Numbered from the stretch's first letter, positions 17,257 through 46,226 are shown. The stretch: 64,000 nt of DNA from Rebecca billardiae RCC1528 (GCA_965240325.2 OZ251229.1:1302001-1366000); one strand, 5' to 3'. Notes: generated from the letters alone by a model not told the origin. Program-made: numbers and translations.

Positions 17257-17291
<35 letters not shown>

Positions 17292-20200: not shown

Positions 20201-20782
20201 CGTCGGCCTCGGAGAGGCGCAGCTGCATGAGCTCCCACGCGCCGCGCGCCGCCGCCGCCTCCTCCTCGTCCGCGCTCGCCGCGCCCGCCTGCAGCGCCTC
20301 GGCGCGCGCCGCGAGCTGCGCGCCGAGCGCATGCAGCTTGGCTTCGAGCTGGGCGCCGCGCCGCGCCGCCGCCGCCTCACGTGCCTCCGCGCGCTCCGCG
20401 GCGGCGCGCTGCGCGGCGGCCTCGCGCTCCGCGCCCTCCGCGCGCGCGCGCAGCGCCTCCGCCGCCTCGCCCACCACCGCGCCCGCCAGCTCGGCGCGCG
20501 CGCGCGCCTCGGCCGCCCTCGCGTCGTCGAGCGCGCGCGCCAACGCCGCGTGCCGCTCGGCGGCTGAGGACAGCCGCGCGCGCAGCTCAGTGCGGTCGGC
20601 GGCGGCGTCTGCGAGCTGGCGCTCGGCGACCTCGGCGCGCTTCGACGCGGTCGCCTCCGACACCTCCAGCTCGTACAGCCGCGCGCGCGGCGGCGGCGCG
20701 TCCGACGGCAGCGGCCGCTCGGCGGCGGCGGCGCCGCCGGCGCCGCCGCTCGGCGCCGCCGCGGCCGCGGCCGCGAGCGGGT

Positions 20783-20818
<36 letters not shown>

Positions 20819-21847: not shown

Positions 21848-21880
<33 letters not shown>

Positions 21881-23151
21881 TGTTGCCGCCGCCGCCGCCA
21901 TGCGGCAGCAGCAGGCCCTGGCGCTCCATCTCGAGATCGTCGTGCTCGGGCTGCGCCGAGAGCGCCGAGTGCGCGCGCGCGCCGCCCGGCGCACCCGCGT
22001 CCGGCTGCGGGTAGAGCGCGCTGCTGCCGCCGCCGGATGCGGCCGTGCTGGGCCGAGTCGACATCAGGCCGCCGCCTGCGCCGCCTCCGCCGCCTCCGCC
22101 GCTGCCGCCGCCGCCGCCGCCGCCGCCGCTGCCGCTGCCGAGCAGCAGCTGCGGAGGGAACGCGGCGGCGTCGGCGAGGCCGGCGGTGGCGGAGATGCCC
22201 GCGGCCTGCCGCGCGTACCGCAGCTCGCGGCGCAGCGAGCTCACCTCCTCCTCCGCCTTCATCTGGCCGCGCCGCGCCGCCTCGAGGTCTGACGAGCGCA
22301 CAGCCAGCTCGGCGGTCAAAGCCTGCAGCCGCTCGCGGACGCGCCGCCCGCCCGCGCCGCCCGCGCCCGCGCCCGCGTACGCGCCGGCGGCGGCGGCGTG
22401 TGCCGGCGGCGGTGGCGCGGGCTCGGCGGCGGCCGAGCCGGGCGTGCCGACGCAGCTGCTTCGCGAGGCGCCGTGCGCCGCGCCGCCCGCCGCCGCCGGC
22501 GCGCGCGGCGTCGCGGCCCACGGCGCGCCGTCGCCGCCGCCGGCGATCGGCGGCGCGGCGGCAGCGTCCGCCCAGCCGGGGCCGGCCGAGCCGTCGGCCA
22601 CGTCCCTCAGCAGCGCCTCCTCCGCGTCGATCGCCTCGAGCCGCGCGTCCAGCCGCGCGAGCACCGCGGACATGGCGCCCGCCGTGTGCGCCGTGGGCGG
22701 CGGCGCGGCGCGCGGTGCCGCGGCGGCGGTGGGCGCGGGCGAGGCGGCGGAGCAGCTGTGGCCGCCGCCGCCCGGCGCGGCCGGCGGCGGCGCGGCCGCC
22801 GCGCCGCCGCCGCCGCCCGCGAGCGCGAGCAGCGGGTCGGCCGAGGCGGCGGCGCCACGCTCGGCGCCCACCGCCGCGCCGCCGCCGCCGGTCGCGAGCG
22901 CAAGCAGCGGGTCTGGCGCGCCGCCGGCCGGCGGCGGCGGCGGCGTCGCGGGCGGCGCGCCCGGCGTGGGCGCGGCGGCGGCGGGGTGCGTCGGCTGCGC
23001 GTCGGCGCCTGTCGCGAGCGCGAGGAGCGGGTCCGACGCGCGCGCGGGCGGCGGCTCGGCGGCGCTCGGCGGCGCGCCCGCGCGCACGTCGAGCGCGGCG
23101 GCCGCGAGCGGGTCGGCGGGCGCTGCGCGGCGCGAAGGCGGCGGCGGCGGC

Positions 23152-23192
<41 letters not shown>

Positions 23193-25598
23193 CTCCGGTC
23201 GGCGCTGCTGCTCGGCGTGCGTGGGCGCGGGGGGGCCGAGCGCGGCGCCGGCGAGCGCGGCGCGCGTCTCTCTCAGCAGCAAGCGCAGCTGGTCGTTCTG
23301 CAGCGCGAGCTCGCGCGCGGCCACCTCGTGCTCGGTCGCGCGCGCGCGCTGCCTCGCCAGCTCGACGCCGAGCGCGTCCGCGCGCGCTCGCGCCTCCTGG
23401 CCGGCCTCGCGCTCTCGGCGACCCTCGCGGCGGCGCGCGACGAGCACGTCGTGCGCGAGCTCGGGCGGCGCGCCCTTGAGCTCGTCCAGCTCCGCCTCGA
23501 GCTCCTCGAGCTCCGCCACCGCCTCGATCTCGAGCCCGAGCTGCGCGGCGCGCTCGCCCCGCTGCAGCGCGCGCGCCCGCAGCGCCCTCTTGAGGCGGAG
23601 GCGCTCGGCCTCGAGCGCGGCCAGCTCGTCCTCCAGCTGCAAGTTGGTGGCGCGCAGCCCCTCGAGCGCGACCTGGCTGCGCAGCCGCAGCGCGGAGAGG
23701 TCGTACCCCTCCCCCGGCCCGACGCCCAGCCTGTCGCGCAGCCCCTCCACCTCTTCCTTGAGCAGCTCGAGCTGGTCTTCGCGCGCGTTGCGCTCGCGCA
23801 CGAGCGCGCGGATGTCTGCATCGCGTACGGCGACGAGCGCCTGCAGCTCGTCGATCTCGGAGACCGCCTCGCGCAGCCCGTACACGCCGTGCTCGTACGC
23901 GCTCATCCGCGCGCGCAGCGCCTCCTTCTCGCCCTCCAGCCCCGCCACCGAGCCTTCCAGCTCCGCCGCGCGCGCCCGCTCCTCGACCAGTCTCGCGCTG
24001 GCGCGCCGCTCGGCGCCCGCCGCATCGCGCAGCTGCTTGGCCTGTGAAGCGCGCACCTCCGCCACGCGCCTGTCGGCGTCCTCCTGCTCGGCGAGGAGCT
24101 GCGCCTCGAGGTGCTCGATGCGCGCGTGCGCCTCGCGCGCCGCCGCCTCCGCCTCCGCCGAGCGCACGCCCGCCTCCGCCGCCGCGCCGCCCGCGCGCGC
24201 CTCGGCCAGCTCCGCGCGCGCCGCGCGCACCTCCTCCTCCAGCGCCTCCGCCGCGTGCTCGCGCTCGTCCAGCTCGTCGCCGCGCCTGCGCACCTCGGCC
24301 TGCAGCTGCTCGATCGACTCCTCGAGCTTGTCCGCCGCGGCGAGCAGGTCGTCGTGCTCGTCCTGCAGCGCGGTGTAGCTCTCCTGCACCGCCTCGAGCC
24401 GCGCCTCCGCCTCCGAGCGGTCAGACTCGGCGGCGCTCTGCTCGGCGCGCGCCGAGCGCAGCTGTTCGCGCAGAGAGTCGAGCTCGGCCGCGCGCTCGGC
24501 CGCCTCCGCCAGCACCTCGTCCAGGTCGGCGCGCAGCTCGTCGCGCTCCTTGTGCGCGCGGTCGACCGCGTCGTGCAGCAGCGAGAGCTCCGAGTCCTTC
24601 TCGCGGATCGTCCGCTTCCGCGCGCGCTCACCCTCGCGCTCTGCAACCGCCGAGTCGGCCAGCGCCTTGAGCCGCTCTTCTTTGTGCGCGAGCTTGTCCG
24701 TGAGCTGCTCGACCTCCTCCTCCAGCCCCTCGTACGCCTTGCGCGCCTCGCGCGTCTCGCGGCGCGACTTCTCGAGCGCCTCCTTCCCCGCCTCGAGCTG
24801 CTCTTCGAGCGAGGCGAGCTTCGCGGCGGTGCGCTTCTTTTCGCTCTGCGCGCGGCGGCGCGCCGGGCGAGCGCGCGCGGCGGGGGCGGCGCGCGTGGGC
24901 CGAGCGCGCACGGGCGGCGCGCGCGCGGGCCAGCAGCCCGCCGCCCCGCGCCCACCCAGCACGCCGCGCGTGCCCGGACGCGCCCGCTCGGCGCGGGCTT
25001 GGCGCCGCCCGCGCGCGCGCGCGCGGCCGCACACCTGGCTGGTGCGCTGCTCCTCCTCGAGCTGGGAGATGCGCGCGCGCAGCTGGTCGGCCGCGCGGCC
25101 GCCGCCGCCGCCGGTGGCGACCGTCGCCTCGCCGCTCTTCTTCAGGATGTCGCCCATGTCCTCCACCTCCTCGCTCTTCTCGCGCAGCTCCTCCTTCAGC
25201 TGCGCCACCTGCTCCTCGAGAGCGCGCAGCTCGGCGCGCGCCTTCTTGCGCGCCTCCTTCTCCTCCGCGAGCTCCTCGCGCGCATCGGCGAGCTCGCGCG
25301 CGGCGGCGCCCGCCGCGGCGTCGTGGTCGAGCTTCGCCTTGTCCTGTGACTCCTCGCTCGACTCGGCGCGCGCGACCTCCGCCTCCATGCACAGCTGCAT
25401 CACGCGCAGCGCCTTGGCGAGATCGGCGGCCGGCGCGCTCGCGTCGACTTTGAGGCCGCCGAGGCGGGGCGCGAGCTTGCGCAGCAGCTCGAGCTGCGAC
25501 TCGGAGCCGCTCAGCGCCTCGTCCACGTCCACCGCGCGCAGGTCCGGGTCGGCCAGCACCTCCTCCAGCTCGCGCGTCTTCTGCGCGAACGCCACCAT
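14927..25598 (-). CDS. CEP290: Centrosomal/transition-zone protein CEP290 homolog, about 3280 aa, 6 exons (25598-25035, 24845-16995, 16836-16585, 16432-16060, 15925-15795, 15598-14927)
   Basis: CEP290-diagnostic blocks RMSAYEHGVYGLREAVSEI...RDADI...LRDRLG...LEAERLRLK...RGERAAQLGL, RWEAEKRAQRRLDALRARL and C-terminal LSPEFFDEVEELKY. Five introns (one GC-AG) give an in-frame 9843-nt CDS. Confidence 0.88.
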
Positions 25599-26265
25599 CG
25601 CGGTGGCGTTCGAAATAGGGGGCGCCCGCCAAGGCCAACCGTCCGGAGAAGTGCCCTGGCAGCATGGCGCCCGCGATCTCAGGCTGCGCAAGGCCATGCA
25701 GGGGCTTTGGGAGGGCAGCCCGCTCGCGGAGAGACGTTGCGCCGGACCGCTAGTCGCCCTGCATCCCGCGAGCCGACGACTGGAAGCAGCGCCATGCGCC
25801 CTCGTCCGAGTGGCTGCAGATGAGTCCGACGGCTGGCCGAACACCTCCCGCCCCGGTGCGGCTGCGCGGCGACCGGGGTCGGCCGCGGCGGGTGCGCCCG
25901 GCGGCCCGCGGGTCGGCAAACCCGCACGAGTAGCCTGCGTCGTAGACTAGCGCTAACGGTGACGGTCGGGTACGACTGGCGTGGGTGATACTCACGGACC
26001 GACGGGGCCCACGGCCGACTGTCTGTCGCACGCGGCCGACTCTGTCTGTCGTCGGCCGCGCGGACCGGGACTGGCGGCGGACTGCTAAGACTGAGTCGAG
26101 TCTGACGGCGCCGGCACTTCTAAACAGCGCAATAACTTTTATCTGCTAGTCTGCTTATTTGAGGTAACAACTAGTTATGCCCAGCTTGGCTATGCAGTAT
26201 ACATGTGTCATCAACGTTGCTGCTGCTGCTTTGAACTTGAAGTTGAAGTGATGCGGGGCTGACCG

Positions 26266-26677: not shown

Positions 26678-29164
26678 GCCGCGCGCACGCACCGTAGCTC
26701 ACGAAGATGGTCGCGGTCGCGCTCTCCACCATGTCTGTCACCTGCTGCGTGACAGTGAAGCCCGTCCAGAAGCCGAGCATGCCGATGGCCAGCAGCGTGT
26801 TCAGCGAGGCGCCGAGCCCGAGCCCGAGAAAAAGGGCGAGCACGCCGGAGAGGCAGCCGCCGAGCACGCAGCCGAAGAGGAGCACGTTGCCGATCAGGTC
26901 GTCGTTCACGAGGCTCTCCATCCCCTTCGCCTTGAGCATGCGCCACGTGTCGCTCGCCGCCTGCAGCGCACGCCGCCCGCCGGCCGCGCCGCGCGCGCGA
27001 GTCAGCTCTGCGCGCGCGGCGGGGGCGGCGCGCGCGCGGCGCGGCGCGCGCGCGGCGCGGCGCGGTGCGGCGAGCGGCGCGGCGAGCCGCCGCCGCGCAC
27101 CTGCGTGAACGACACGCCGTACAGCGCGACGCGCACGTAAGCGTAGTGGTTGAAGTACTCGACGAGCCAGTCGAGCGCGCCCAGGCAGCAGAGCAGACAG
27201 GAGCGGCAGCACGCCTCAACGCACAGCCCGCCCTCGCCGCAGCAGCCGCCGCCGCCGTCGGCAGACGCGTTCATGTTGTGCACGAGCGTGCGCAGCGTGC
27301 GCAGCACGGCGGTGAGCAGCGCGCCCTGGCAGATCGAGCCGAACGACGTGGTGCACGCGCGGCGCAGCGCGCCCTCCACCGCGTCCGCCGGCGCCGCGCC
27401 CCCCTGGAAGTACCACGCGCCGACCGCGCCCGCGCACGCGACGTGCGCGACACCTTTGAGCACCTGCGATGTCCAGAAGAACATGAGGATGAGGAAGAGC
27501 GCGACGAGGCCGCTGCCGCCGGTCGCGAGCATCGTCGCGCCGTACGTCCACACCCACAGCCCGATCCACGCGAGCTCCGCCGCCATCGCGCCGTACGGCA
27601 GCGCCGTGCGCGCGCGCGGGAACGCGCGCAGCGCCGTGAGCGAGACGCGCAGCACCGCGACTGCAAACGGGATGTGCCTGCGCACGACGTACGTGTAGAA
27701 GGCCATGAGCAGGAAGAGGAGGAGGTAGAGCACGCAGCCCTGGCTGATCAGCACGCACGAGACCACCGCGAGCACCAGCGCCGCGCCCAGCGCCGCGTAC
27801 ATCGTGAACGGCACGAGCTGCTCCGCGTGACTAAACATGAGGCCGAGGTAGGCGGCGCCGAAGAGTGCCGCGGCCGCGCTGCACGCCAGCAGCACGCCGA
27901 CGAGCAACGAGGCGGAGAGCGCGTCGGCGGGCGCGCCGACGGCCAGGGGCGCGGTCGCCGAGCCGCCGATCGTCGCGATGAGCACGCCCAGCATGCACAG
28001 CGCCCACACCAGCGCCCAGTTCCGGTCCCGCCACTGCGAGTCAGCATGGCCGCCCTCTTGCTCGGCACCGCCGCCCGGCTGCTCGGGCGGACGGCCCGCC
28101 TCCACGCCCGTTGGCTGCGCGTACGGCGGCTGCTGCTGCGCGTGCGGCTGCTGCTGCTGCGCGTACGGCTGCTGCTGCTGCGCGTACGCCTGCGCGTACG
28201 CCTGCGGCTGCGGCTGCGGCTGCGCGCTCGAGCTCGGCTGCGCGGACGCACGCGTGCGCTCCACAGCCTGAGTCACGAGCCCGGTGGCGCGCGAGAGTAG
28301 TCCGCTGGCACCGCCGCCTGACGCACCGGCGGGCGTCGCGCTCGCCGAGCTGGCCGCGGCGGCCGCGCCCGCGGGCGGCGGCGCCGGCGGCGCAGCCCCG
28401 GACGGGGCCGCCTGCGCACCGCCATGCTGAGCGGGCGGCGCCCCCCGAGGCTGCTGCCGCCACAACGGCACGTCCGTGAAGGCGGCCCCGGCCGCGCCGC
28501 CCGGTGCGGGCTGCGGCTGCGCGGGCGTGGGCTGGGCCTGCGACCAGCTCGGCGCGGCGGCCGCCACCTGCGCCCCAGGATAGCCTCCCACGCCCACGGG
28601 CGGCGCGGGCGCCGGCTCTGTCGGTGGCTCGAACTGCGGCGCCGGCTGAGCCACGTGGCCGGGCGGCGCGACCGGCGCGTACGACGGTGGCGGCGGCACG
28701 GCATCCGGGCGGCTCTCGGCAGCGGCGGCGTCCGCACCGCCGCCAGCCTGCTCGGCAGCGCGCCTCTCGGCGTCCTTCCGCTCCTGCTCCTGCCGCCACG
28801 CCTCCACCTTTGTGGCCGCGCTCTGCGAGGCCGTGGCCGTCGCCTGCGCCGCCTTCTGCGCCGCGGAGGCCGCGACGGTGCTCGCCTGCTTCGCCGCGGC
28901 GCCGGCCTTCTCGCCAAAGGTCGACATGCGCGACGAGCTCCCACCGCCGCCCGGGGCCACCGACGAGGCCGCCGGCGGCGGCGCGGCCGGTCGCGCGTCC
29001 ACCGGCTCTCCATGCACCACGCCACCGACCGCGGCGGGCGGGGGCGGGCCCTGGGCCGAGTACGCGGGCTGCGCGTCGTCGAAGGGGTTGGTTGACGCGC
29101 TGGGCGGGGCTGGCGTTGCGCACACCACCGGAAGCTGCGACTGCGGCCGCTGCTGCTCGCTCAT
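26266..29164 (-). CDS. Choline transporter-like (CTL/SLC44/PNS1 family) protein, 3 exons (29164-27101, 26960-26693, 26570-26266)
   Basis: Pro/Gln-rich N-terminus, then WRD, multiple TM helices, RRHIPFA, FFWTSQV, GAVGAWYF, TTSFGSICQGAL, EYFNHYAYVRVALYGVSFTQA, LVNDDL and FVSYADDP (spliced). Confidence 0.9.
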
Positions 29165-29525
29165 GGCCGACGGCACCGCCGCCCGGGCCGCCGGCAATGA
29201 TGGCAGTCGAGACGCGAAAACTCGCGCGCGAGAAAAGCGCAGCAGCTGTGCATGCTGCATCCGCGCTGCTGTCTCGACAAATAAAAAAGCAGGCTGCGCG
29301 CGTGGGTGCGCAGTGGCGCTCGCCAGCGCAAGCCGCCCGGTGATTCGCTGCGGCAGCCGCACGCACGCGCACGGGGGCACGGGCACGGCACGGCACGGTT
29401 GGCCACTCGCCACTCGAAGCGACCGTGACCCAGACGAAACTTCGAGTGTAACCCCGCCCTTTTTTGAGCTGGTCCAGGAAAGTGGAGGCTGCGCCACCCA
29501 TCCGCCGCCTCGCGCGCGCATCCAG

Positions 29526-31028
29526 ATGCGGCTGGCGGTGGCGTGGCTGTTCATCGGCAGCGTCGCCGGGGGCGGGGGATGGCTCCGCGGCGCTGCCGAA
29601 TCGCACGCACGCGGCGCAGCCCGCGCGCTGCGTGCGCTCAGCGGCCGTCTCTCCTCGCTGGCGCCCGCGGAGGCGGAGGACCGGACCGGCCTGCAGCAGC
29701 GGATGATGCACCAGCTCATGACGCAGCAGCAGCAGCCGCGAGCGCTGATCTCGTACCCGCCCACGGCGGCCGATGCGGCCGTACACGACGTGCCGTACAC
29801 CGGCGGCGCGTTCGCGATGCCGCCGAGCCCGAGCTGGCTCCCGCGCCGGCTGCGGCTGCTGCTGACGCCTCGGCACTGCCCGCAGCTGATCCAAGGGGCG
29901 CTGCTGCTCAGCCTCGCGCCGTACAACCTCAACGCCACGCGCGAGTCGGTCGTCGTGGGCGCGCCGTGCGTGCGCCAGCAGTGGCTCGTCGACCGCGCCC
30001 TCCGCCCCGCGCGCCCGCGCTGGAGCCCCGCGCTCGGCGCCGTGCTGCCGGCCGGTCCGAGCGGCCGAGGCGGCTCGGGCGTGCACGTCACCCAGACGAT
30101 CCGCTCGCCGCGCGTGTGCTGCGTGATCTCGTGGCGCGCGCGGCCGACGCGCTCAGACGCCGCCGGGCCCGCCGCCGACCGCCTCGTCACCGTCGCCTTC
30201 CGCGGCACCAAGGAGCTGTGCGACGTCCTCACCGACATTGACATGCTGCCCGCGCGGTATCGCGCGCGCGGCGGCGCGGCCGGCGGCGGCGGCGGGGCGG
30301 GCGGCTCGTTCGCGAGCGGCGGAGGGGAGGGCGCGCGCGCGGCGCGCGCGCCGACGGACGAGCGCGCGCACTGCCACCGCGGCATCGTGCGCGCCTTCGA
30401 GTCCGTCTCCGCCGAGCTCGACGCCGTGCTCGCGCACGCGCTGCCGGAGGGCGGGCGGGTGCTGTACACAGGGCACTCGCTCGGCGGCGCGCTCGCGCAG
30501 CTCGGCGCGGTGCACGCGTCGCGCTGCAGCACGGCGCGGCGGCCGCTGCGCCCGACGCTGGTCACCTTCGCCGCGCCCGCGATCGGCAACCGCCAGTTCG
30601 TCTCCGAGCTCAACGCGGCGGTGGAGCCGCACGGCGGGCTGCGCGTGCACAACCAAGGGGACCCTGTCCCATCGCTCAGCCGAGCGCTCGGGTACAGGCA
30701 CGGCGGCGTCTCGCTGCAGCTGCCGCTCGCGGAGAACGCGCGGCGCGCGTACGCGAGCGCGTCGGCGGAGCACCCGGCGTTCGGCGCGATCGCGCCGCAC
30801 GTGCTCTACCACATCGGGCACACGGTGTACGGCGTGTGGACGCCGACGCCACGCGCGCCGGGAGCGGGCCAGCCAGCGGCGGCCGCCGCCACCTCGCCCG
30901 CAGGCGGCCTCTCGCGGACCGGCGCGAGGGTGACGCGCGCCCTCAGGGGTGCGGCGTGGGGTGCGTCCGGGGTGGCGCGCCGGCTGGCCATCGCGAAGGC
31001 AGCCTCGAGTGTGCGCAACTTCGGCTGA
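29526..31028 (+). CDS. Class-3 (fungal-type) lipase with hydrophobic N-terminus (500 aa)
   Basis: VAFRGT, HRG, YTGHSLGGALA, VTFAAPAIGN, GDPVP and a C-terminal His. Confidence 0.9.
   Translation: MRLAVAWLFIGSVAGGGGWLRGAAESHARGAARALRALSGRLSSLAPAEAEDRTGLQQRMMHQLMTQQQQPRALISYPPTAADAAVHDVPYTGGAFAMPPSPSWLPRRLRLLLTPRHCPQLIQGALLLSLAPYNLNATRESVVVGAPCVRQQWLVDRALRPARPRWSPALGAVLPAGPSGRGGSGVHVTQTIRSPRVCCVISWRARPTRSDAAGPAADRLVTVAFRGTKELCDVLTDIDMLPARYRARGGAAGGGGGAGGSFASGGGEGARAARAPTDERAHCHRGIVRAFESVSAELDAVLAHALPEGGRVLYTGHSLGGALAQLGAVHASRCSTARRPLRPTLVTFAAPAIGNRQFVSELNAAVEPHGGLRVHNQGDPVPSLSRALGYRHGGVSLQLPLAENARRAYASASAEHPAFGAIAPHVLYHIGHTVYGVWTPTPRAPGAGQPAAAAATSPAGGLSRTGARVTRALRGAAWGASGVARRLAIAKAASSVRNFG

Positions 31029-31208: not shown

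Positions 31209-31212
<4 letters not shown>

Positions 31213-31299
<87 letters not shown>
31213..31299. repeat. (TA)n microsatellite between convergent lipase and myosin 3' ends
   Basis: Uninterrupted TA run of about 87 bp. Confidence 0.97.
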
Positions 31300-31479: not shown

Positions 31480-34400
31480 TCACGACGACGCGGCACTCTT
31501 GGACGCTTTGGGCGCCTTCGCCTCCCACATTTTGATCTTGGCGTCATCGCCTGCGCTGTAGAGCGTCTTTGAGGTCGTGTCGTACACCACGCACCTCAAG
31601 AACTTGGTGTGTCCTGAGGCGCGGCGGCGGGACGAGGGCGGCGCGGCCGAGCGTGAGCGTGCGCGACGCGGCGCGCGGCGCGCGAGGCGTGGGAGAGGCA
31701 GGAGCGGGGCGCCACCGCCGCGCCGCACCGAACAGCGTGGTGCACTCGCCCGACTTGAGGTTCCACACCTTCACCTTGCGGTCCTCCGCGCCCGAGTAGA
31801 GCGTGCCAGAGTCGTTGTGCAGGTAGAGCGCGCGCACCACGCCCTCGTGCCTGCGGCAGCCGGCGGGAGGCAGCGGCGCGGAAGGGCGGGGCGGTGGGCA
31901 CGCGGCGCGGCGCGCTGGGCCCCGGGGCGTGTCGTCGCGCGAGCGGCGAGCCGGGCCGCTGCACGCGCCCGACGGAGCGGCGCGCGGGGCGCGGCCCCGC
32001 GGCCCCGCGGCCCGCGCGGCGCCCGCCATCCCCGGGGCGCGGCCCACGCCTTGCGGTGACGCGAGCGCGCCCGCCGCCTCCGCGGCCGGCGCGGCGCGCG
32101 CAGCAAGCGCGCGCGAGGCCCGCGCGGGCCCGCTGCTCGCTCGCTCGCGCGCGCGCGCGCACCCGAGCAGCACGTGCGACTTCTGCATGGTGTGCAGGTT
32201 CCACACGCGCACCTTGAAGTCGGAGCAGCCTCCGTACACGTTCTCGCTGCCCACCGCCACCGAGTACACGTCCGCGGCCGCCTGGAAAGTGGCGAGCAGC
32301 ATCATGTTGCTCATGTTCCAAACCTGCGCCGGGCGCGCGCGGCGCGCGGCGCGCGGCGCGCGGCACGCACGAGCGTGCCCGCGGCGGGTGCGCGGCCGAG
32401 ACGGCGAGAGCGGCGCGCGGCGAGCGGCGCGTGAGCGCGCGCGCGCGCGGCGCGCGAAGCGCAGACCGGTGGCTGGTCGCGCGCGCGCGGCGCGCCGCCC
32501 TGCCTTCGGCGCGGTGCGCGGTGCCCGCGGTGCGCCGCGCGGGCGGTGCGCCGCGCGGGCGGTGCGCCGCGCGCGCGCACCTTGACCGTCTTGTCCCGCG
32601 AGCCCGACACGAGGTGCGTGCCGTTGTGGATCGCGAGCGCGCGCACCCAGCCGTCGTGGCCGTGCTTGCCCTCCAGTGTGTGCACCGGCGTGAACGTGTC
32701 GAGCGACCACACGCGGATCGACTTGTCGTTGCCGCCGGAGACGAGGACGGAGCCGTGCATCGCGAGGGCGCGCACGCGCTGCTTGTGCCCCTTGAGCGTC
32801 GCGCGCTTGCGCAGCGTGTTCAGGTCCCACACGATGATCATCTTGTCGTCCGACGCGGAGACGAGCACGCGCTCGGTGATGACGAGCGCGCACACCGCGG
32901 CGGTGTGCCCCTTGAGCGAGTCAAAGCCGGGCTTGGAGCCCGAGGGCAGGTTGATGTACCGGTCCATGTGCCACACCTGGATGTCGCCGCCGTACAGTCC
33001 GGAGAAGACCTTGTGCCCCTGCACGGCGAGCGCGTACACCGCGTCGCCCAGCCCCTCGAGCGTCGCCGTGTTCACGATCGGCAGCTTCTTGTGCGACGCG
33101 GCGCCGTCGACCGGCCCGCCGCCCGCGAGCGTGGTGGTGGTGGTGGTGGTGGTGGGCGCCGCTTCCTCGTCCGACTTGGGCGGGATGTCGAGCGCGGCGG
33201 TGATCGGGTTGTGCACGATCGAGACGAGGAAGTTGAACGCCTGGAACGCGCTCAGCGGGTGGCAGTACGCCATCCCCCAGTGCCCGTCGTTGTACTTGCG
33301 CGCGCGCAGGATCACGTGCCCGCGCTGCGGCGGCACGTCGTGGTAGAGCTCGATCACGCCGCCAGGCGCGACGACGAGCTGGCCGCGCAGGATGAACATG
33401 TGGTCGGTGCGGCCGGCCTTGTACAGCTGAAGCATCGCCTCCTCGGGCGCGGAGGGGCGGAACTGCGCGCACGCGCCGTCCTTGCGCACGCGCGGGATCA
33501 CCAGCTCCACCTGCAGCGGGCCCACCATCTTCTTCTTGTACACGATCAGCCCGAGCTCGCGCCGCGGCTGTCCCGTCTTGAGCCCGTACGGGTCGTTGGA
33601 GTCATCGTGCATCACCCACTCCTGCGACTTGGTGTTGGTGCGCAGCCGGCCGGCGAAGGCGGGCTTGCCGCCCGGCGCGGACGGCGCGTCGCCCTCCTGG
33701 TCGAGCGACACCATGAACTCGATGCGCTGCGCGTTCGCCCGCTTGGACGCGGAGAAGGCGAACGCGCGGTAGTTCTCGGAAAGTACCAGGTAGAGCGCGT
33801 GCTTTGGGAAGAGAGAGGAGCCGCCCTCCTTCAGGAAGTGCGTCTCGTTCATCAGCGGCGTGGGCTCGGCCCAGCGCGCGGGGTTGATCAGCAGCGCGCG
33901 CACGTCCGTGTCCGCCTTCGTGATCCCGAACCGCTCGTGCAGCGCCTTCGTCGAGCGCGGCGTCGAGAGCGAGAGAGCGGCGGAGACGGAGGTGGTGCCG
34001 CCGCCGCCGCCGTCCGCGCCGCCGCCGCCGCCGCCCGCGCCGCCCGACGACAGCTCGCCCGCCATCGCCTCGCGCCGCTTGGCGAGGTCGGCGGTGGTGA
34101 GCGCGGCGTTGTCGACGTGCGGCTGCCCCTGCGGCGCGTGCGCGCGCTGCAGCTTCATCTTCAGGTACAGGTTCTGGTAGTGCTCGTCGAGCGGGTGCTG
34201 GCGCGACGACTGTCCCGTTGTCTCGTTGTAGAAGTAGAGCAGCCCGTGCGGGTCGAGCATCTCGACCCAGCCCGGCGGGTCTGGCGCCATCAGCGCCTCC
34301 TCCGCGATCCAGAGCAGGTCCTGGTCGACGTTGGGGTCCATCCCGAGGTACACGGCGTACTCGAGGATATCCTCGGGCAGCGCCTTGAACTCCGCCTTGT

Positions 34401-34521
34401 ACCGCGCCGACTCCTTGGGCGCGTCCTTTGGGCGCGCGCGCGGCGTCCAGTTCTTGGCGGCCTCGTCCTTCTCCGCCGCCTTGTGCGCCGCGTCCGACAC
34501 CTTGCCCATGTCCAGCCTGAA

Positions 34522-34569
<48 letters not shown>

Positions 34570-37505
34570 CGGCGGCGTCGCCGCCGCCGCGGCCTCCGCG
34601 AGCTGCCGCTCCTCCTCCTCCTTCCGCCGGCGCGCCTCCTCCGCCTCGCGCTCCGCCTCCTGCGCCGCCAGCCGCTCCTCCTCCATCGCACGCTCTCGCT
34701 CGAGCTTGCTCATCCGCGCCAGCTCCTCCTCACGCCGGATGCGCTCGGCCTCCTCCTCCGCGCGGCGGCGCGCCTCCTCCTCCTCGCGCGCCTTGCGCTC
34801 GAGGTGTTCTTGCCAGATCGCCTTCCACGCCTTGCGCTGCACCATCCCGCGCACGCGCGCCTGGATGTAGCTCGACTTGAGCGAGATCTGTCGCTCGCGC
34901 AGCAGCCGCAGCTTGGCGAGCACGCCCGACTTGAGGAACGCCTTCGTGCGGCCGAGCGCGAACTCCTTCGGGCCGACGAGCTTGGCGAGCACCTGCTCGC
35001 ACGCCGCCTTCTCGGAGGCCGACGCGTCGGGCCGCTCGGCCGGCAGCAGGCAGCAGTAGAAGCGCGAGATCACCTCGCCGTGCGGCACGCGGTCGGGGTA
35101 GCCCATGCCGTACACGCGCACGACCTCGAGCACGCCCGAGCACGACAGCTGGCGCATCAGCGTCTCGTGGTCCCACTCGGACGCGCGCTTGCGCATGTTG
35201 GGCTTGATGCAGCGCACAAAGTGCATGTCGCTCGCGTCGAGGATCGCGGTGAGCTCGTCGAGCTGCCGCATGAACTTTGCCACCACGCCCTGGAACATGG
35301 CGCCGCGCTTGCGCGCGAGCTGCCCCTGCGTCGCCTGGTCGACGCTGAACATGTCTCGCACGATCGGGTCTTCCGACGCCTGCATCAGCACGAGCATGTC
35401 CTCGGAGACGGTGTCCTTGTTCTTGCCGAGCATGCCGGTGGCGGAGTACTGCACGCGCCCCGCGTAGTGCACGACCTCGAACGCGTCGCGCGCGCGCAGC
35501 ACCTTCTTGAAGCGGCGGTTGCCCGCGTGCGCGCGCACGAGCTTCTCGTGGAAGGTCACGTCCGAGCCCTGCGGCACCACGCACTCCTCGTTCAGCATCG
35601 GCAGGATGCCGAGGGGCTGCGCCTCGATGAGTTCGAGGACCTCTGCGTTGTCGAAGTCGGCGAGGTCGGCGTCCTCCACCTGCACGCCCTCGATCGCGTT
35701 CTCCTCCTGCGCGCTCATGAACACCGACTCGTTGAAGCGGTTCTGCAGCTTCTCGTTCGTGAAGTTGATGCACAGCTGCTCGAGCGAGTTGTGCTCAAAG
35801 TGCTCAAACCCGAAGATGTCGAGGATGCCGATGAAGAAGCGCGCCTCGGCCGCGGGCCCGGCGCCGTCGGGCCGCGCGCCCGCGAGCGAGAGCGACTGGT
35901 TCACGCGCTTCACGATCCAGTCGAACAGCTTCGAGTACATCGCCTTGGCCATGCCCTCGCGCATGTACCCCGCCTGCGTGACCGTGCTGCTCGTGTCGAT
36001 GAACTCGCGGCCCGCGCGGATCTTGCGCTTCGTCAGCGCGAAGCGCAGGCCGGCCGGGTCGATCTTGGCGAGCGAGGCGACGGAGGTGAGCAGCCCCTCC
36101 TCCTGCACCGACGACTCCGCCTCGGGGTCGCCCCCGAACGTCACGTTGCCCATGTGCAGGATCGCGCCGAGCAGCTGCCACGCAGACGCCCGGTCGTCCG
36201 CGCTGAACCCCACGTCCACCAGCGCCGCCTCCGTCTGCGCAAACAGCTCGGGGTCGTCGTGCAGCGCCTCGCCCTTGCCCAGCAGCCGGTACGCGTCGGC
36301 GCGCTCGACGCCGGCGGCCGACGCCGTCCTGCCCCCCGCGCACAGCTGGTAGAACGAGTGGTAGTTCCGCTCGCCCGGCGTGTGCGAGATCACGCGAGAT
36401 TTCTCGAGGAGATACGTCGAGATGGTCGCGCCGATGATCTTGCCGCTCACGTCGAACTGCGCGGCGTGAGCGGCGGCGAGGGGGCGCGCGGCGGAGAGCG
36501 TGGTGCAGCGGCGCGGGCGTGGGGCGGAGGGGCGCGCGCGCGGGCGGGCAGGGCGTCAGGGCGCGCGCGAGGCGCGCGCGCGTGACGCCGCGAGGACGGC
36601 CGGGTGGGCCGGGCAGGGTGGCGGGTGGCAGTGCCAGCGCGGTGGCAGCCGCCGCACACGGCGCGCGCGCATGGCCGCGCGGACGGCCGCCCGGCCGCGC
36701 CGCCGCGCTCACGCGCGCCCGAGCGGGGCGCCAGGCGAGCGCACACGCCAGCTGCCCCCCCCCCCACCGCGCACCGCGCGCGCGCGCGCCGCCCGCCCGC
36801 CCGGCGCACAGCGCGTCGCACCTGCAGCATCAGGAACTTGCCGTACCGGGACGAGTTGTCGTTCATGTGCGTCTGCGCGTTGCCGAACGCCTCGAGGACG
36901 GGCGTGGACGCGATGATGCGCCCCTCGAGGCCCGAGCCGCCGCTGCTCGTCGCCGCGTGCGCGAGGTACTGCAGGATGATCTTCGACGTCTCCGTCTTGC
37001 CTGCGGAGCGCGCGGCGCGGCCGTGCATCGGAGCGGCAGTGCGGCCGCCGCGGGGGCGCGGGCGCATGCATCCGGCTCAGCGCGACGCGCGGCGAGCGAG
37101 CGCGGACGAGGAGACTGCGGCCCGAAGGGCGCCGTGCGCGGCAGCGCGCCGCGCACCTGCGCCCGACTCGCCCGAGATGATGAGGGACTGGCTGCGCGAC
37201 TCGAGCAGCCCGCGGTACGCGTCCGCGGCGACCGCGTACACGTGCGGCTTCTCGGGCATGCTGGCGTACTGCGTGTACTCCTCGAGGCGCTGCTGGGAGT
37301 AGATCCCGTCGATCTTCTTGTACGGATTCATCGCGACGAGCAGCGCGTTGATGTTGGAGTAAATCTCGTCCTTGTTGAAGCGGATCTTGAGCGCCTCCTC
37401 GATCGACTCCGGGTCGAGATTGCGCAGCTTGGTGAGGTCATCTGGCACGAGCTGCCCATCGGCCCCGCCGAGGACGGACTGCCGGCGGCTGCCCGACCGC
37501 AGCAT
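31480..37505 (-). CDS. Unconventional myosin (about 1606 aa): motor, IQ, ER/K helix, CEP164-like WW, Tubby-like domain, WD40 repeats; 6 exons (37505-37157, 37000-36822, 36456-32581, 32323-32163, 31850-31729, 31613-31480)
   Basis: Motor motifs [19 protein letters not shown] (spliced), [50 protein letters not shown] follows. Tail domains are described in findings. Five GT-AG introns give an in-frame 4821-nt CDS. Confidence 0.93.
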
Positions 37506-43312: not shown

Positions 43313-44620
43313 CTAGCCTGTCAGCAACACACTCAGGTCGTCGAAGCCGGTGAAGCTCCGATAGCGCACAGAGTTGGCGTTGCACCAGCGCTCGAGGTCC
43401 GAGCCGGGCACGACGAGGAGGGTGTCGATCAGCTGGGGCTCGGCGCGCAGCAGGCACGCCTCGCTCACCTGCGCGCCCACGTAGATGACATGCGGCGAGC
43501 CTCCGTCGGCACGACGGAGTGTGCGCGTGTCGAGCCACGCGCGCAGCGCGCGGATGCGATCGGTTGGTTCCCAGCTCGTGCACTCCCACCGGTGCGTGGC
43601 AGCGCGGCAGATGCCGTCCGCGGCCATCGTCGGCACGTGCGACAGCCCAGCCTCGCGCAGCAGGTGGCGCACGAACGGCTTGATCCCACTCGTGAGCACG
43701 CACAGCTCCCACTGGCGCACGCACGCGTCCTCACAGAATGTGATGAAATCGTCGCGCAGCCGCCCACCCAGCTTGTCGTGCACGAGCTGCGCCACATCGA
43801 CCACGCTGCACTGGACGTCGGCCGTCACGCGTTCGCGGCTCGAGCGCGCGGCCGCCTCGGCGTGTGCTGGCCAGGATGTGGCGGCGGCGTCGCCCACGGC
43901 CGGCACGACGGCGGTGTCGGGGGCTGAGGTGGCGACGCCACACGCCTCGAGGATCGCCTCCGTCGACGAGCGTGCCGACATCTCGAACAGGACGTGGTCG
44001 AACTCGCAGCACAGCACCGCGGTGCCGCCGACCGGCGCCGCTGCGCCCGGCGCGCGCGCGTCTGGCCCCAGCCCGAGGTCTCTCGAGCTCGTCGGGACGC
44101 CGGTCGCGAGCGCGTGCTCCAGGCGATCGACCCAGCGGTCGACCCCATCGATGAGCTCCTGCATCTTGGGCTCCAGCTCGAGCTGAAGCCGCGCGAGCGA
44201 CGACTCAATGGCCGCCTTGTCCGACACCTCGTCGAGTCCGCTGTACGGCGCGACGACCTCGGTGGCCTCGACGAGCACGCCCTGCGCGTCGGCAGGCTCC
44301 GCGGCCGGAGCGTGCGCACCCGGCGTCGCGGAATGCGCGGCGGCCTGGGCATGCTTCTGCAGCTTGGCGCGCAGCTTTAGCGCGCGGGCATTCTCAGGCT
44401 CGTCCGCGAGGGCGGTGCTCACCAGCCGCTCCGCCTCCGCGTGGTCGCCGAGCCTGAGGCGGCTGAGGGCGAGGTTCACGCGCAGGTCCGTCCGGGCGTG
44501 AGTGTCGTCGGCGGATGCCAACGACGACACCTCCTGCAACGCCAGCGTGTACGCGACACTCGCCTCGTCGTAGCGGCCTGCCGCGAAGTGAGCGTTGCCG
44601 GCGGACCGGTAGTGCGCCAT
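43313..44620 (-). CDS. TPR domain fused to a degenerate HAD phosphatase (MtnX/PHOSPHO-like) domain (435 aa)
   Basis: N-terminal co-chaperone-type TPR (AGNAHFAAGRYDEA...NLALSRLRLGDHAEA...EPENARAL). C-terminal HAD-like elements CCEFDHVL, CVLTSGIKPFV, IYVGAQVSE and LERWCNANSVRYRSFTGFDDL. Confidence 0.72.
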   Translation of the reverse strand: MAHYRSAGNAHFAAGRYDEASVAYTLALQEVSSLASADDTHARTDLRVNLALSRLRLGDHAEAERLVSTALADEPENARALKLRAKLQKHAQAAAHSATPGAHAPAAEPADAQGVLVEATEVVAPYSGLDEVSDKAAIESSLARLQLELEPKMQELIDGVDRWVDRLEHALATGVPTSSRDLGLGPDARAPGAAAPVGGTAVLCCEFDHVLFEMSARSSTEAILEACGVATSAPDTAVVPAVGDAAATSWPAHAEAAARSSRERVTADVQCSVVDVAQLVHDKLGGRLRDDFITFCEDACVRQWELCVLTSGIKPFVRHLLREAGLSHVPTMAADGICRAATHRWECTSWEPTDRIRALRAWLDTRTLRRADGGSPHVIYVGAQVSEACLLRAEPQLIDTLLVVPGSDLERWCNANSVRYRSFTGFDDLSVLLTG

Positions 44621-44732
44621 GCTGAACCCCGCAGGCGGGGTCAACGGCGCGCGAGCGTCCGCGGTCCGGCCGTTCCGGGCATCACTTGGGCGAGGTCGCC
44701 ATCGCAACTCACGCCGCGCCCGTGCATGACCC

Positions 44733-45983
44733 ATGGCGGGCCGCGCCCGCGCTGCGGCGGCAGAACGTGGCCTGCGCCCGGTGATCATCGTCCCAGGTGA
44801 CGCCTCGAACCAGCTCGAGGCGCGCGTGCGCAAGCCGCGCGTCGTGCGTCCGTGGTGCACGCGAGACTCAGGTGGCAAGTGGTTCCGCCTGTGGCTCAAC
44901 CTGGCGAGCCTGCTCGCGCCGCCCGAGCTCCCATGCTGGGCGGACAACATGCGCCTCGAGTTCGATCCCAGCACGCAGCGCTCGCACAACGCGGCCGGCG
45001 TCGAGACTCGCATCGTGGGCTGGGGCGACACCGCCTCGCTCGAATCGCTCGACCCGGCACTCCCCTTCCCCTCGGCGGCGACGTGGCGCCCGCTCGTGCA
45101 GGCCCTCGTGGATGATCTGGGCTACGAGCGGAACGTGAGCGTGCGCGCCGCGCCGTATGACTTCCGGTACTCGCCGCTCTCCGACGGCGCCCGTTACTTC
45201 CGCGCGCTCGAGGCGCTCGTCAACGCGACCTCGGACGCTCACGGCGGCGCGCGCGTGGTGTTGGTCGCGCACTCGCTCGGCTGCAAGCTCGCGCAGCGCT
45301 TCCTCGGCACACGCTCGCGCGAGTGGCGGCGCGCGCGGATCGAGCACTTCGTCGCGATCGCGGGCGCGTTCGGCGGGAGCGCCAAGCTGCTCCGGCTGCA
45401 CGGCAGCGGCGACGCGGAGGGGCTCCCGTTGCCGCCGCTGCAGCTGCGCGCCGAGCAGCGCTCGTCCGAGAGCAACGTGTGGATGCTCCCGCACGCCGAG
45501 GTGTTCGGCGATGCGCCACTCGCGCGCACACCGGCGCGCAACTACACTGCCGCCCAGGCGGCCGACTTCCTGCGCGCGGTCGGGTACGCGGACGGCGCCC
45601 TGCTCCTCGCCGAGCTCGCGCCGCTGCGGAGGGCATTCGCCGAGCCGCCTGGCGTGCGCACGAGCTGCCTCTCGTCGCGCGGCGTCCCGACCCCGGCGGC
45701 GTTCACGTGGCACGCCGGGCCGCGGGCTTTCGACGCGCCGCCCGCAGTCGCGCTCGGTGACGGTGACGGCGCGGTGAACGCGCAGAGCCTCGGCGTCTGT
45801 GAGACATGGGCGGGAGCCCAGCCAGAGCCGGTGCACTCTGCGCGGTTCGAGGGCGTGGCGCACGCAGACATGATCACAGACAAGGCCGTCATCAAGCACG
45901 TGGCGTCCATCCTCGCGCCCACCGGCAGCCGGGCGGCTGCGCGCGGCCGTCGGGAATGGCCGCGGGCGAGCGGTCCATATTGA
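44733..45983 (+). CDS. LCAT / group XV phospholipase A2-like acyltransferase (416 aa)
   Basis: PVIIVPG..SNQLEAR, WFRLWLN, CWADNMRL, GVETR, LGY...AAPYDFR, VVLVAHSLG, GDGDGAVN and catalytic His in AHADMI. Confidence 0.92.
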   Translation: MAGRARAAAAERGLRPVIIVPGDASNQLEARVRKPRVVRPWCTRDSGGKWFRLWLNLASLLAPPELPCWADNMRLEFDPSTQRSHNAAGVETRIVGWGDTASLESLDPALPFPSAATWRPLVQALVDDLGYERNVSVRAAPYDFRYSPLSDGARYFRALEALVNATSDAHGGARVVLVAHSLGCKLAQRFLGTRSREWRRARIEHFVAIAGAFGGSAKLLRLHGSGDAEGLPLPPLQLRAEQRSSESNVWMLPHAEVFGDAPLARTPARNYTAAQAADFLRAVGYADGALLLAELAPLRRAFAEPPGVRTSCLSSRGVPTPAAFTWHAGPRAFDAPPAVALGDGDGAVNAQSLGVCETWAGAQPEPVHSARFEGVAHADMITDKAVIKHVASILAPTGSRAAARGRREWPRASGPY

Positions 45984-46226
45984 TGATGGAGGATGAGCCG
46001 GCGCCCGGCGATGTGGTTCCTGAGCAGCGGGAGATCTCGTCATCAGATCTCTAGATCTTTACATATCGCGCGGGATGAAACCAATACTACTAATTGCAAC
46101 CGCGGCCACGCGAGCTCGCGCCCGACTCGCGCTGCCGAGGGGTCTCGATCGGGTTGGTCTCGGGTCCCTGACGACGCTGCGCGCTGCACGTGCGAGGCTG
46201 CGAGCCGGTCTGCCGTTGGTGAGTGG

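What the first reader, a model, noticed from the sequence alone, without database searches (positions are those of the whole stretch)
31480..37505. Myosin with a CEP164-like WW, Tubby and WD40 tail: candidate actin motor for ciliary-base trafficking
Seen: an intact motor (P-loop GESGAGKT, switch I NSSRYGK, switch II DIFGFE, Glu at the TEDS position), one IQ and an ER/K single-alpha-helix. At about 34155-34390 follows [36 protein letters not shown]...[21 protein letters not shown]. At about 33210-33895 follows FPKHALYL...SASKR...FMVSLD...GRLRTN...MHD...RRELGLIVY...GP...VIP...FRP...[15 protein letters not shown]40 repeats complete the tail. Motor, WW, Tubby and the first WD repeats share one exon (36456-32581), so the fusion is not a gene-model artefact. 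Knowledge: the first block matches the N-terminal helical+WW module of distal-appendage protein CEP164 (the TTBK2-binding region). The second matches the Tubby/TULP C-terminal domain, a PI(4,5)P2-binding ciliary cargo adaptor. Inference: two cilium-associated modules on one myosin suggest a motor coupling actin to membrane or cargo delivery at the flagellar (or haptonemal) base. I do not recognise this architecture from named myosin classes but cannot confirm it is new.
Basis: partly seen in the sequence, partly recalled or inferred. Interest (0 to 1): 0.88.

Follow-up and report, generated by a model that had tools for sequence, protein, structure and literature searches.

The report
Haptophyte myosin with WW-Tubby-WD40 tail
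A real six-exon gene of a GC-rich haptophyte alga encodes an actin motor whose tail joins a CEP164-like WW unit, a lipid-binding Tubby barrel and a WD40 propeller; the design is conserved across haptophytes, but nothing ties it to cilia and WW/Tubby-tailed myosins were already listed in 2014.

Summary
A six-exon minus-strand gene (37505-31480, all GT-AG) encodes a 1606-aa myosin. It has an intact motor, one IQ, about 72 residues of ER/K helix, a WW module, a Tubby domain and a seven-bladed WD40 propeller. Motor, WW, Tubby and the first four WD blades lie in one exon.

The WW module matches the CEP164 N-terminal domain (PDB 7NWJ, E 1e-15) across helices, WW and the following helix. The Tubby call passes Pfam and Foldseek.

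Full-length orthologues with the same architecture occur in Pavlovales, Prymnesium parvum and Chrysochromulina tobinii, some as complete transcripts.

The ciliary reading is not supported:
- The Trp that CEP164 needs to bind TTBK2 is an invariant Arg here.
- No match to the N-terminal half of TULP3, the IFT-A-binding part, was found.
- The same WW module sits in a whole haptophyte myosin clade with PDZ, Tubby-only or no extra tail domains.
- Neighbouring genes are lipid-metabolism genes.

Sebé-Pedrós et al. 2014 already list WW and Tub tails for heterokont and haptophyte class XXI myosins. I found no description of the added WD40 propeller or of the CEP164-type WW.

This scan had already noted paralogous CEP164-WW myosins elsewhere in this genome (s1-352987 and others).

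Most likely it is a monomeric membrane-tethering or cargo myosin. No RNA run was listed.

The parts
37157..37505 (-). CDS exon 1 (Met to first base of the Gly codon in GESGAG|KT); start of the motor
   Evidence: Pfam Myosin_head E 9.5e-28 on this piece
36822..37000 (-). CDS exon 2 (KTETSK...[14 protein letters not shown]; P-loop end and switch I)
32581..36456 (-). CDS exon 3, one open frame of 1292 aa: rest of motor, IQ, ER/K helix, WW module, Tubby domain, WD blades 1-4
32163..32323 (-). CDS exon 4 (WD blade 5)
   Evidence: colinear with transcript orthologues P0085 and P0089
31729..31850 (-). CDS exon 5 (WD blade 6)
31480..31613 (-). CDS exon 6 (WD blade 7, stop TGA)
   Evidence: Pfam WD40 on this piece
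34885..37442 (-). Myosin motor domain (spliced aa about 22-700, two introns inside). P-loop 37172..36993, switch I 36863-36834, switch II 35820-35803, TEDS-site Glu at 36006-36004.
34813..34869 (-). Single IQ motif ([19 protein letters not shown])
   Evidence: read from the sequence
34594..34809 (-). ER/K-rich helix, 72 aa, 69% E/R/K/D/Q and only 8 hydrophobic residues: probable single alpha-helix lever extension. A Gly16 run follows at 34569-34522.
   Evidence: SAH assignment is inference from composition
34135..34383 (-). CEP164-NTD-type WW module: two helices, WW (core 34275-34192), third helix. The second signature Trp is replaced by Arg.
33205..33843 (-). Tubby C-terminal-type beta-barrel with central helix. 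The canonical PI(4,5)P2 motif GRLRTN is at 33651-33634.
31501..33090 (-). Seven-bladed WD40 propeller (three introns inside)
   Evidence: The AF2 model of orthologue P0085:1293-1590 has pLDDT 92.6 and pTM 0.90. Foldseek finds LIS1, RACK1 and beta-TrCP at TM 0.84-0.90.

Best explanation
This is an expressed-type, intact gene for an unconventional myosin of a haptophyte-specific clade. The shared tail element of that clade is a CEP164-NTD-like WW module, a WW domain inserted in a three-helix bundle.

Shown:
- A catalytically complete motor with a constitutively acidic TEDS site.
- One IQ, then an ER/K helix and no recognisable coiled coil.
- The WW module.
- A Tubby barrel that keeps both basic residues of the canonical PI(4,5)P2 pocket (R-L-R for K330-L-R332).
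- A closed seven-bladed WD40 propeller.

Inferred mechanism: a single-headed motor with a long, partly SAH lever. The Tubby barrel holds it on a PI(4,5)P2-rich membrane, most likely the plasma membrane. The WD40 propeller and the retooled WW module bind protein partners. The motor therefore tethers or moves a membrane-bound protein complex along cortical actin by coincidence detection of lipid and protein.

The WW module is the slowest-evolving part of the protein. It probably carries the key conserved interaction, but not a CEP164/TTBK2-style polyproline contact, because the groove Trp is an invariant Arg.
For: Gene and domains.

CEP164-type module:
- E 9.6e-16, 77 aligned residues. A56, P57, P59, W62, Y73, N76, G80, Q81, S82, H86, P87, D89, E90, H91 and Y92 are conserved.
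- helix-helix-WW-helix topology.
- 7o06, probability 1.0, 36-38% identity.

Tubby. K/R-x-R is retained in the query's group. The role of K330/R332 comes from PMC10445746 and PMC6366083.

WD40.

Family conservation, with full-length proteins of the same architecture:
- A complete MMETSP transcript ORF, P0085
- A transcript ORF, P0089, whose cluster holds Pavlovales sp. CCMP2436 fragments
- P. parvum KAL1495652.1 and KAL1521949.1
- C. tobinii KOO23561.1

Identity by domain: the WW module is 60-94% identical, against 47-68% for the motor.

Clade: the haptophyte CEP164-WW myosins are monophyletic, SH-aLRT 100.

ER/K helix composition.
Against: - No experiment or expression data exist for this gene. 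No RNA run could be listed.
- Lipid binding is inferred from two conserved residues. The second cooperative basic patch of tubby (301-305, RKRKK) is only K-R here (SKRAN).
- The paralogous group B has lost the R332 equivalent (K-L-S), so lipid binding is not universal in the family.
- The AF2 model of the WW-Tubby part is only moderate (mean pLDDT 60; Tubby region mostly 67-86, with low-confidence loops).
- Monomer status rests on composition alone.
- The WD40 propeller has no specific nearest relative, so its ligand is unknown.
Confidence: 0.6

Rival explanations
1. One reading: the myosin works at the flagellar or haptonemal base. There it would couple actin to ciliary membrane or cargo delivery through a CEP164-like docking module and a TULP-like PI(4,5)P2 cargo adaptor.
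For: The WW module really is CEP164-NTD-like. The Tubby pocket residues are kept. All haptophytes with the gene have flagellate stages (my knowledge). Another first-stage note (s1-336809, unchecked) places a paralogous WW-Tubby myosin near PKD2-like channels.
Against: - W84 to R is invariant and F77 is E, in the two grooves that hold TTBK2 (PMC8752127).
- There is no similarity to the TULP3 N-terminal half.
- The Tubby domain is not cilium-specific; plant TLPs have it (PMC6366083).
- The same WW module occurs on myosins with PDZ or no extra tails.
- The kinase fused to a related Tubby domain (P0015) is TAK1/CTR1-like, not CK1/TTBK.
- The neighbours are non-ciliary genes.
Confidence: 0.12
2. 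An endomembrane or organelle-positioning motor in the manner of apicomplexan MyoF. In this reading the WD40 propeller is the main cargo-binding element, and the Tubby barrel binds an internal phosphoinositide pool or a protein rather than the plasma membrane.
For: A C-terminal seven-bladed WD40 on an unconventional myosin is the MyoF design. [quoted passage not shown] Paralogue group B has lost the R332 equivalent but keeps the WD40. This suggests that the propeller, not lipid binding, is the constant function.
Against: This protein has one IQ, an ER/K helix and no coiled coil, whereas MyoF has several IQs and a coiled coil (my knowledge). The motor lies in a haptophyte-specific clade. The query's own group keeps the PI(4,5)P2 pocket residues.
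Confidence: 0.2
3. Artefact: two or more neighbouring genes (a myosin and a WW/Tubby/WD40 protein) read together, or a decaying pseudogene.
For: No RNA reads of this species could be obtained. In this GC-rich DNA, long spurious ORFs occur in every frame.
Against: - Motor, IQ, WW, Tubby and four WD blades are one uninterrupted 1292-codon exon.
- All junctions are canonical and restore the frame.
- Exons 4-6 align without gaps to transcript-derived orthologues of the same length.
- All catalytic motifs are intact.
- The same architecture appears in complete MMETSP transcript ORFs and in annotated genomes.
Confidence: 0.02

Closest known systems
Class XXI myosins sensu Sebé-Pedrós et al. 2014 (heterokonts + haptophytes; PMC3942036)
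   Same: An unconventional myosin of a haptophyte with IQ, WW and Tub in the tail. These are exactly the domains that paper lists for the class.
   Different: - The paper's text does not mention a WD40 propeller.
- In my trees the haptophyte CEP164-WW clade does not join the stramenopile IQ/PX/Tub clade (Chrysoparadoxa, oomycetes). The join is not rejected, however (AU p 0.13).
- Kollmar & Mühlhausen 2017 leave the haptophyte myosins as unclassified 'orphans'.
CEP164 N-terminal domain (PDB 7NWJ, 7O06, 7O3B; PMC8752127)
   Same: A WW domain inserted in a three-helix bundle. Identity is 36-38% over about 77 residues. The linker residues P59, W62, H86 and P87, the helix-3 motif D-E-H-Y and Y73 are conserved.
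   Different: - It is not a CEP164 orthologue; it sits in a myosin tail.
- W84 is R, F77 is E and R93 is Q.
- The N-terminal D10/Q11 segment that contacts TTBK2 has no counterpart in the alignment.
- TTBK2-type polyproline binding should therefore not be assumed.
Tubby/TULP C-terminal domain (PDB 1S31, 1I7E, 3C5N; Pfam PF01167)
   Same: A beta-barrel around a C-terminal helix (TM 0.63-0.73). The K330/R332-equivalent basic pair is kept as R/R.
   Different: Identity is only about 18%. The second basic patch is reduced from RKRKK to SKRAN. No TULP-type N-terminal region is present. The domain is fused to a motor instead of an F-box or an IFT-A-binding segment.
Sister haptophyte myosins with a CEP164-type WW plus Tubby but no WD40 (e.g. 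Haptolina brevifila P0107, Isochrysis galbana P0336; this genome's s1-352987)
   Same: The same motor clade (support 100), the same helix-WW-helix module and a Tubby domain.
   Different: They keep the canonical second Trp (…VLWQHP…) and lack the propeller. The window's subfamily has Arg at that position and adds seven WD blades.
Apicomplexan myosin F (WD40-tailed myosin; PMC5477499)
   Same: A WD40 propeller at the C-terminus of an unconventional myosin.
   Different: No WW or Tubby domain. The neck differs, and the motor class very probably differs too, although MyoF itself was not in my tree (not tested).

Membership tests
Myosin superfamily | Myosin_head domain with P-loop, switch I and switch II | tested here: met
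   Pfam E 1.8e-137 and 9.5e-28. [18 protein letters not shown] and DIFGFE are present. PDB myosins match at E about 1e-94.
CEP164 N-terminal-domain-type WW module | WW domain inserted between helices of a three-helix bundle, with conserved linker residues (P59, W62, H86, P87) | tested here: met
   The phmmer alignment spans CEP164 24-100 in native numbering (chain 29-105), E 9.6e-16. The model shows helices at model residues 12-20, 29-40 and 74-89 around strands 47-61. Foldseek finds 7o06 at probability 1.0.
CEP164 N-terminal-domain-type WW module | XP groove Y73 + W84 and XP2 groove F75 + F77 that hold the TTBK2 proline-rich peptide | tested here: not met
   Y73 is kept and F75 is Y, but W84 is R (in every family member) and F77 is E. 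W84A and F77A strongly reduce TTBK2 binding (PMC8752127).
CEP164 orthologue (distal-appendage protein) | NTD at the N-terminus of a long coiled-coil centriolar protein | tested here: not met
   The module lies at spliced aa 868-950 of a myosin heavy chain.
Tubby/TULP domain (PF01167) | Profile match above the gathering score and a barrel-around-helix fold | tested here: met
   Tub scores 53.5 bits against 27. 1s31 matches at E 8e-13, TMt 0.67; 3c5n at TMt 0.73.
Tubby/TULP domain (PF01167) | Canonical PI(4,5)P2 pocket residues K330 and R332 | tested here: met
   GKLRSN aligns with GRLRTN. K/R-L-R is kept in the Pavlovales and Prymnesiales group A sequences but is K-L-S in group B. Binding itself was not tested.
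Tubby/TULP domain (PF01167) | Second cooperative basic patch (tubby 301-305) | tested here: inconclusive
   RKRKK aligns with SKRAN, so only K-R is kept.
TULP3-type ciliary adaptor | N-terminal IFT-A-binding region ahead of the Tubby domain | tested here: not met
   The match to full-length TULP3 chain 8fh3_I (442 aa) covers only residues 216-357. No other part of the tail matches it.
Class XXI myosins (Sebé-Pedrós 2014) | Tail with IQ/WW/PX/Tub domains in a heterokont or haptophyte | tested here: met
   Haptophyte origin follows from the orthologues.
Class XXI myosins (Sebé-Pedrós 2014) | Motor domain monophyletic with the stramenopile members | tested here: inconclusive
   The two clades are not together in the best FastTree or IQ-TREE trees. 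The constrained tree is 30.8 lnL units worse, p-AU 0.13. The paper's reference sequences could not be loaded.
MyoF-type WD40 myosins | C-terminal WD40 propeller | tested here: met
   Seven blades.
MyoF-type WD40 myosins | Motor in the alveolate/stramenopile MyoF class | not tested
   No named MyoF sequence was in the set. The query sits in a haptophyte-only clade.

The most novel reading that the evidence does not exclude
The CEP164-type 'WW in a helical bundle' would be an old, portable docking unit that haptophytes placed on a whole radiation of myosins. In the WD40-bearing subfamily its proline groove would have been rebuilt (an invariant Trp-to-Arg change) into a new, very strongly conserved binding site. 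Together with a PI(4,5)P2-binding Tubby barrel and a propeller, that site would target the motor to the membrane at the flagellar or haptonemal base. The result would be an actin-based counterpart of the CEP164/TULP docking logic of animal cilia.
Probability: 0.08. Interest if true: 0.65.

Novelty: new variant of a known kind. Interest (0 to 1): 0.36.

Why it matters
Protist myosins carry most of the unexplored diversity of actin motors, and haptophytes are ecologically dominant algae with almost no cytoskeletal cell biology.

This gene defines a conserved subfamily dating at least to the split of Pavlovophyceae and Prymnesiophyceae. The subfamily stacks three separable targeting modules on one probably single-headed motor.

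Two points are useful beyond cataloguing:

1. The CEP164 N-terminal fold is not confined to CEP164. It is the common tail element of a haptophyte myosin clade. That gives a natural series of variants (Trp, Arg, Asn or Leu at the groove position) for asking what this fold binds.
2. The WW module is more conserved than the motor itself, which marks it as the place to look for the partner.

None of this changes a textbook view. The ciliary idea remains a guess.

Tried and rejected
- RNA evidence: the look-up of sequencing runs (kind rna) listed no run. Junction support comes only from canonical splice sites and colinearity with transcript-derived orthologues.
- WW-module-only search of the large protein database: it collected 35 candidates and returned only the near family. 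It gave no information on CEP164 relatives elsewhere.
- ESM Atlas look-alikes of the WW module: generic WW clusters only.
- Class assignment from solved structures: myosin II and XI score alike, so it is uninformative.
- Class assignment from the Sebé-Pedrós supplement: the sequences carry no class labels and the trees are images. Kollmar 2017 supplements: haptophyte myosins are 'orphans', and the domain key lists WD40 and WW but not Tub.
- Skeffington 2023: Supplementary Fig. 16 draws all E. huxleyi myosins but is an image, so I could not check whether this architecture is shown.
- Idea that a Tubby-linked kinase (P0015) might be a TTBK2 analogue: rejected, because it is TAK1/CTR1-like.
- Idea that the haptophyte clade is sister to class II myosins (FastTree support 89): not upheld by IQ-TREE (support 63, deep nodes unresolved).

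Full report
**Observation.**

The minus strand between 37505 and 31480 holds one gene. Translation of 36456-32311 gives an unbroken frame. It runs from FDVSGKI (mid-motor) through IQ, an ER/K stretch, [14 protein letters not shown]…GW…[29 protein letters not shown]…GRLRTN…HPLSAFQAF and several WD repeats.

I located the junctions on the sequence and assembled the CDS.
- There are six exons: 37505-37157, 37000-36822, 36456-32581, 32323-32163, 31850-31729 and 31613-31480.
- Every intron is GT..AG, with donors GTGCG[C/A/G].
- The CDS is 4821 nt, 1606 aa, with one terminal stop.
- The P-loop GESGAG|KT is rebuilt across intron 1, which itself contains an in-frame stop.

**Domain calls.**

Pfam on that single exon gives:
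- Myosin_head, E 1.8e-137
- WW, 30.7 bits against a cut-off of 26.9
- Tub, 53.5 bits against 27
- WD40, 64.8 bits

The catalytic motifs are intact. The residue 16 positions before the DALAK-equivalent is Glu (counted). There is one IQ ([13 protein letters not shown]). It is followed by 72 residues that are 69% E/R/K/D/Q with only eight hydrophobic residues. I read this as a single alpha-helix lever extension, which is an inference. A Gly16 run follows.

The WD region contains seven blades. An AlphaFold model of the orthologous propeller (P0085:1293-1590, about 71% identical) is confident (pLDDT 92.6, pTM 0.90). It resembles generic seven-bladed propellers such as LIS1, RACK1 and beta-TrCP (TM 0.84-0.90). 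That gives no clue to its ligand.

**The CEP164 resemblance is real.**

A phmmer search of the 111-aa WW region against all PDB sequences puts CEP164(1-109) first, at E 9.6e-16. The alignment runs over 77 residues: both helices before the WW, the WW itself and the helix after it. The next hit is ITCH at 5e-9.

The AF2 model of the WW-Tubby segment has the helix-helix-WW-helix order. Foldseek recovers 7O06, 7NWJ and 7O3B with probability 1.0 and 36-38% identity.

I mapped the alignment onto the residue numbering of Rosa e Silva et al. (PMC8752127).
- Conserved: the structural residues A56, P59, W62, H86 and P87, the D-E-H-Y start of helix 3, and Y73.
- Not conserved: W84 is Arg, F77 is Glu and R93 is Gln.

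In CEP164, Y73/W84 form the XP groove and F75/F77 the XP2 groove that hold the TTBK2 peptide. W84A and F77A strongly reduce binding.

The Arg is present in every member of the WD40-bearing family I aligned, in both paralogue groups. The fold is therefore CEP164-like, but the ligand-binding mode cannot be carried over.

**The Tubby domain.**

By sequence, tubby, TULP3 and TULP1 match at E 1.6e-7 to 1e-6. By fold, 1S31, 1I7E, 1C8Z, 2FIM and 3C5N match at E about 1e-12, with target TM 0.63-0.73 over about 250 columns.

The canonical PI(4,5)P2 residues K330/R332 (PMC10445746, PMC6366083) fall in GKLRSN. I checked this by counting in the 1S31 alignment. The window has GRLRTN. K/R-L-R is kept in the Pavlovales and Prymnesiales group A orthologues. 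Paralogue group B has K-L-S.

The second cooperative patch (301-305, RKRKK) is SKRAN here.

The match to full-length TULP3 (8FH3 chain I) is confined to its Tubby domain. By my knowledge, the unmatched N-terminal part is the one that makes TULP3 a ciliary adaptor by binding IFT-A.

**Relatives.**

Searching the tail against 5.8 billion proteins returns 30 proteins. Many carry Myosin_head + WW + Tub + WD40 at full length, 1538-1881 aa.

Cluster look-ups name the following, and I re-scanned three of them with Pfam:
- Prymnesium parvum KAL1495652.1 (group A, about 55% tail identity)
- P. parvum KAL1521949.1 and Chrysochromulina tobinii KOO23561.1, annotated 'myosin' (group B, about 40%)
- Fragments from Pavlovales sp. 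CCMP2436, in the cluster of one of the query's closest relatives (P0089)

Several relatives are MMETSP transcript ORFs marked complete (P0085, P0089, P0022), so the whole architecture is transcribed as one mRNA in relatives. Exons 4-6 of my model align to P0085 and P0089 without gaps across each junction and end at the same place.

The window therefore comes from a Pavlovophyceae-like haptophyte. The family predates the Pavlovophyceae/Prymnesiophyceae split. No RNA run of the species itself could be listed.

**Where the motor belongs.**

I searched the motor against 1.84 billion representatives and built trees: FastTree on 172 motors and IQ-TREE on 74.

All haptophyte myosins with a CEP164-type WW form one clade (support 100). 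Its subclades are:
1. WW(Arg)+Tubby+WD40, which includes the window's gene.
2. WW only (P. parvum P0095 and others).
3. WW+PDZ.
4. WW(Trp)+Tubby without WD40 (Haptolina).

Isochrysis P0336 has the same WW+Tubby architecture by Pfam, but I did not place it in a tree.

Classical, bundle-less WW domains occur in the MyoIV-like WW+MyTH4 proteins, which lie elsewhere.

A stramenopile clade fits the published description of class XXI. Its tails are IQ (oomycetes: Achlya, Lagenidium, Pythium), PX (an unnamed metagenomic member, P0329) and Tub (Chrysoparadoxa). It is separate from the haptophyte clade in my best trees. Forcing the two together costs 30.8 lnL units and is not rejected (p-AU 0.13). Deep nodes are unresolved, and a FastTree link to class II (support 89) drops to 63 with IQ-TREE.

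**What is already known.**

- Sebé-Pedrós et al. [quoted passage not shown] WD40 does not occur in that text.
- Kollmar & Mühlhausen 2017 leave E. huxleyi and P. parvum myosins as orphans. Their domain key lists WD40 and WW but not Tub.
- Skeffington et al. 2023 draw all E. huxleyi myosins in a supplementary figure that I could not read.
- No paper in the searchable library links CEP164 to a myosin WW domain.
- This scan had already met the theme in the same genome. It noted a Myosin-WW-Tubby gene that a follow-up agent judged real but already catalogued (s1-352987). First-reader notes record CEP164-type WW myosins with SH3/prenyl, PDZ, PH/ankyrin and EF-hand tails. These notes fit my tree but are not independent evidence.

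**Function.**

Four things argue against the ciliary reading:
1. The altered WW grooves.
2. The absence of a match to the TULP3 N-terminal half.
3. The fact that the WW module is the common element of a whole myosin radiation rather than a marker added to this one gene.
4. The neighbouring genes, which are choline-transporter-like, class-3 lipase, LCAT, FSH1 hydrolase and TPR.

A kinase fused to a related Tubby domain (P0015) is TAK1/CTR1-like, not TTBK-like.

What the anatomy does support is a probably single-headed motor with a long lever and three independent targeting modules. The Tubby barrel of this gene keeps the lipid-pocket pair. The WW module is the most conserved part of the protein, 60-94% identical against 47-68% for the motor.

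My best reading (0.6) is a membrane-anchored tether or short-range transporter that recognises PI(4,5)P2 plus protein partners. A MyoF-like endomembrane role (0.2) and the ciliary-base role (0.12) remain open. An annotation artefact is excluded for practical purposes.

**Verdict.**

The domain interpretation is confirmed. The ciliary inference is unsupported.

The kind, a haptophyte myosin with WW and Tubby in the tail, is already catalogued. The WD40-bearing subfamily with the Arg-substituted CEP164-type WW is a conserved variant that I could not find described.

Interest is moderate.

Noticed in passing
window 31209-31299: A perfect (TA)45 microsatellite lies about 180 bp downstream of the myosin stop codon, in otherwise 70% GC DNA.
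   Followed up: no
window 14805-25919 (minus strand): A 3704-codon open frame lies in a block of 76-85% GC and has no Pfam match. It may be a low-complexity giant gene or simply stop-free GC-rich DNA.
   Followed up: partly
window 27002-31028: Overlapping long ORFs on opposite strands both carry real domains. Choline_transpo (E 9e-40) is on the minus strand at 27002-30652, and Lipase_3 (E 4e-20) is on the plus strand at 28812-31028. The true exon structures were not resolved.
   Followed up: no
window 43313-46967: A run of TPR (minus strand), LCAT-like acyltransferase (44733-45983, +) and FSH1 serine hydrolase (45993-46967, +) genes. Together with the lipase and choline transporter, this makes a lipid-metabolism-rich neighbourhood.
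   Followed up: no
P0015 (JGI metagenome protein, 932 aa): A TAK1/CTR1-like protein kinase is fused to a Tubby domain 45% identical to this myosin's. The subfamily's Tubby barrel has therefore also been attached to a kinase.
   Followed up: partly
Paralogue group B (P0064 C. tobinii, P0046 P. parvum, P0023 and others): Group B keeps the WW(Arg), Tubby and WD40 domains but has Ser at the R332-equivalent of the PI(4,5)P2 pocket. Its WW no longer reaches the Pfam threshold. Lipid binding may have been lost in one paralogue.
   Followed up: partly
P0278 (Chrysoparadoxa australica CAM9203280.1): This stramenopile myosin has a strong Tub domain (E 6e-50) but no WW. It sits in a different motor clade with oomycete IQ and PX myosins. 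Tubby may have been recruited to myosins more than once.
   Followed up: partly
L001-L005 (Tara Oceans and other marine metagenome contigs): An identical 1407-aa group A protein is encoded on contigs from at least five ocean samples. A separate upstream gene call there carries the N-terminal part of the motor. The family belongs to an abundant, cosmopolitan haptophyte.
   Followed up: no
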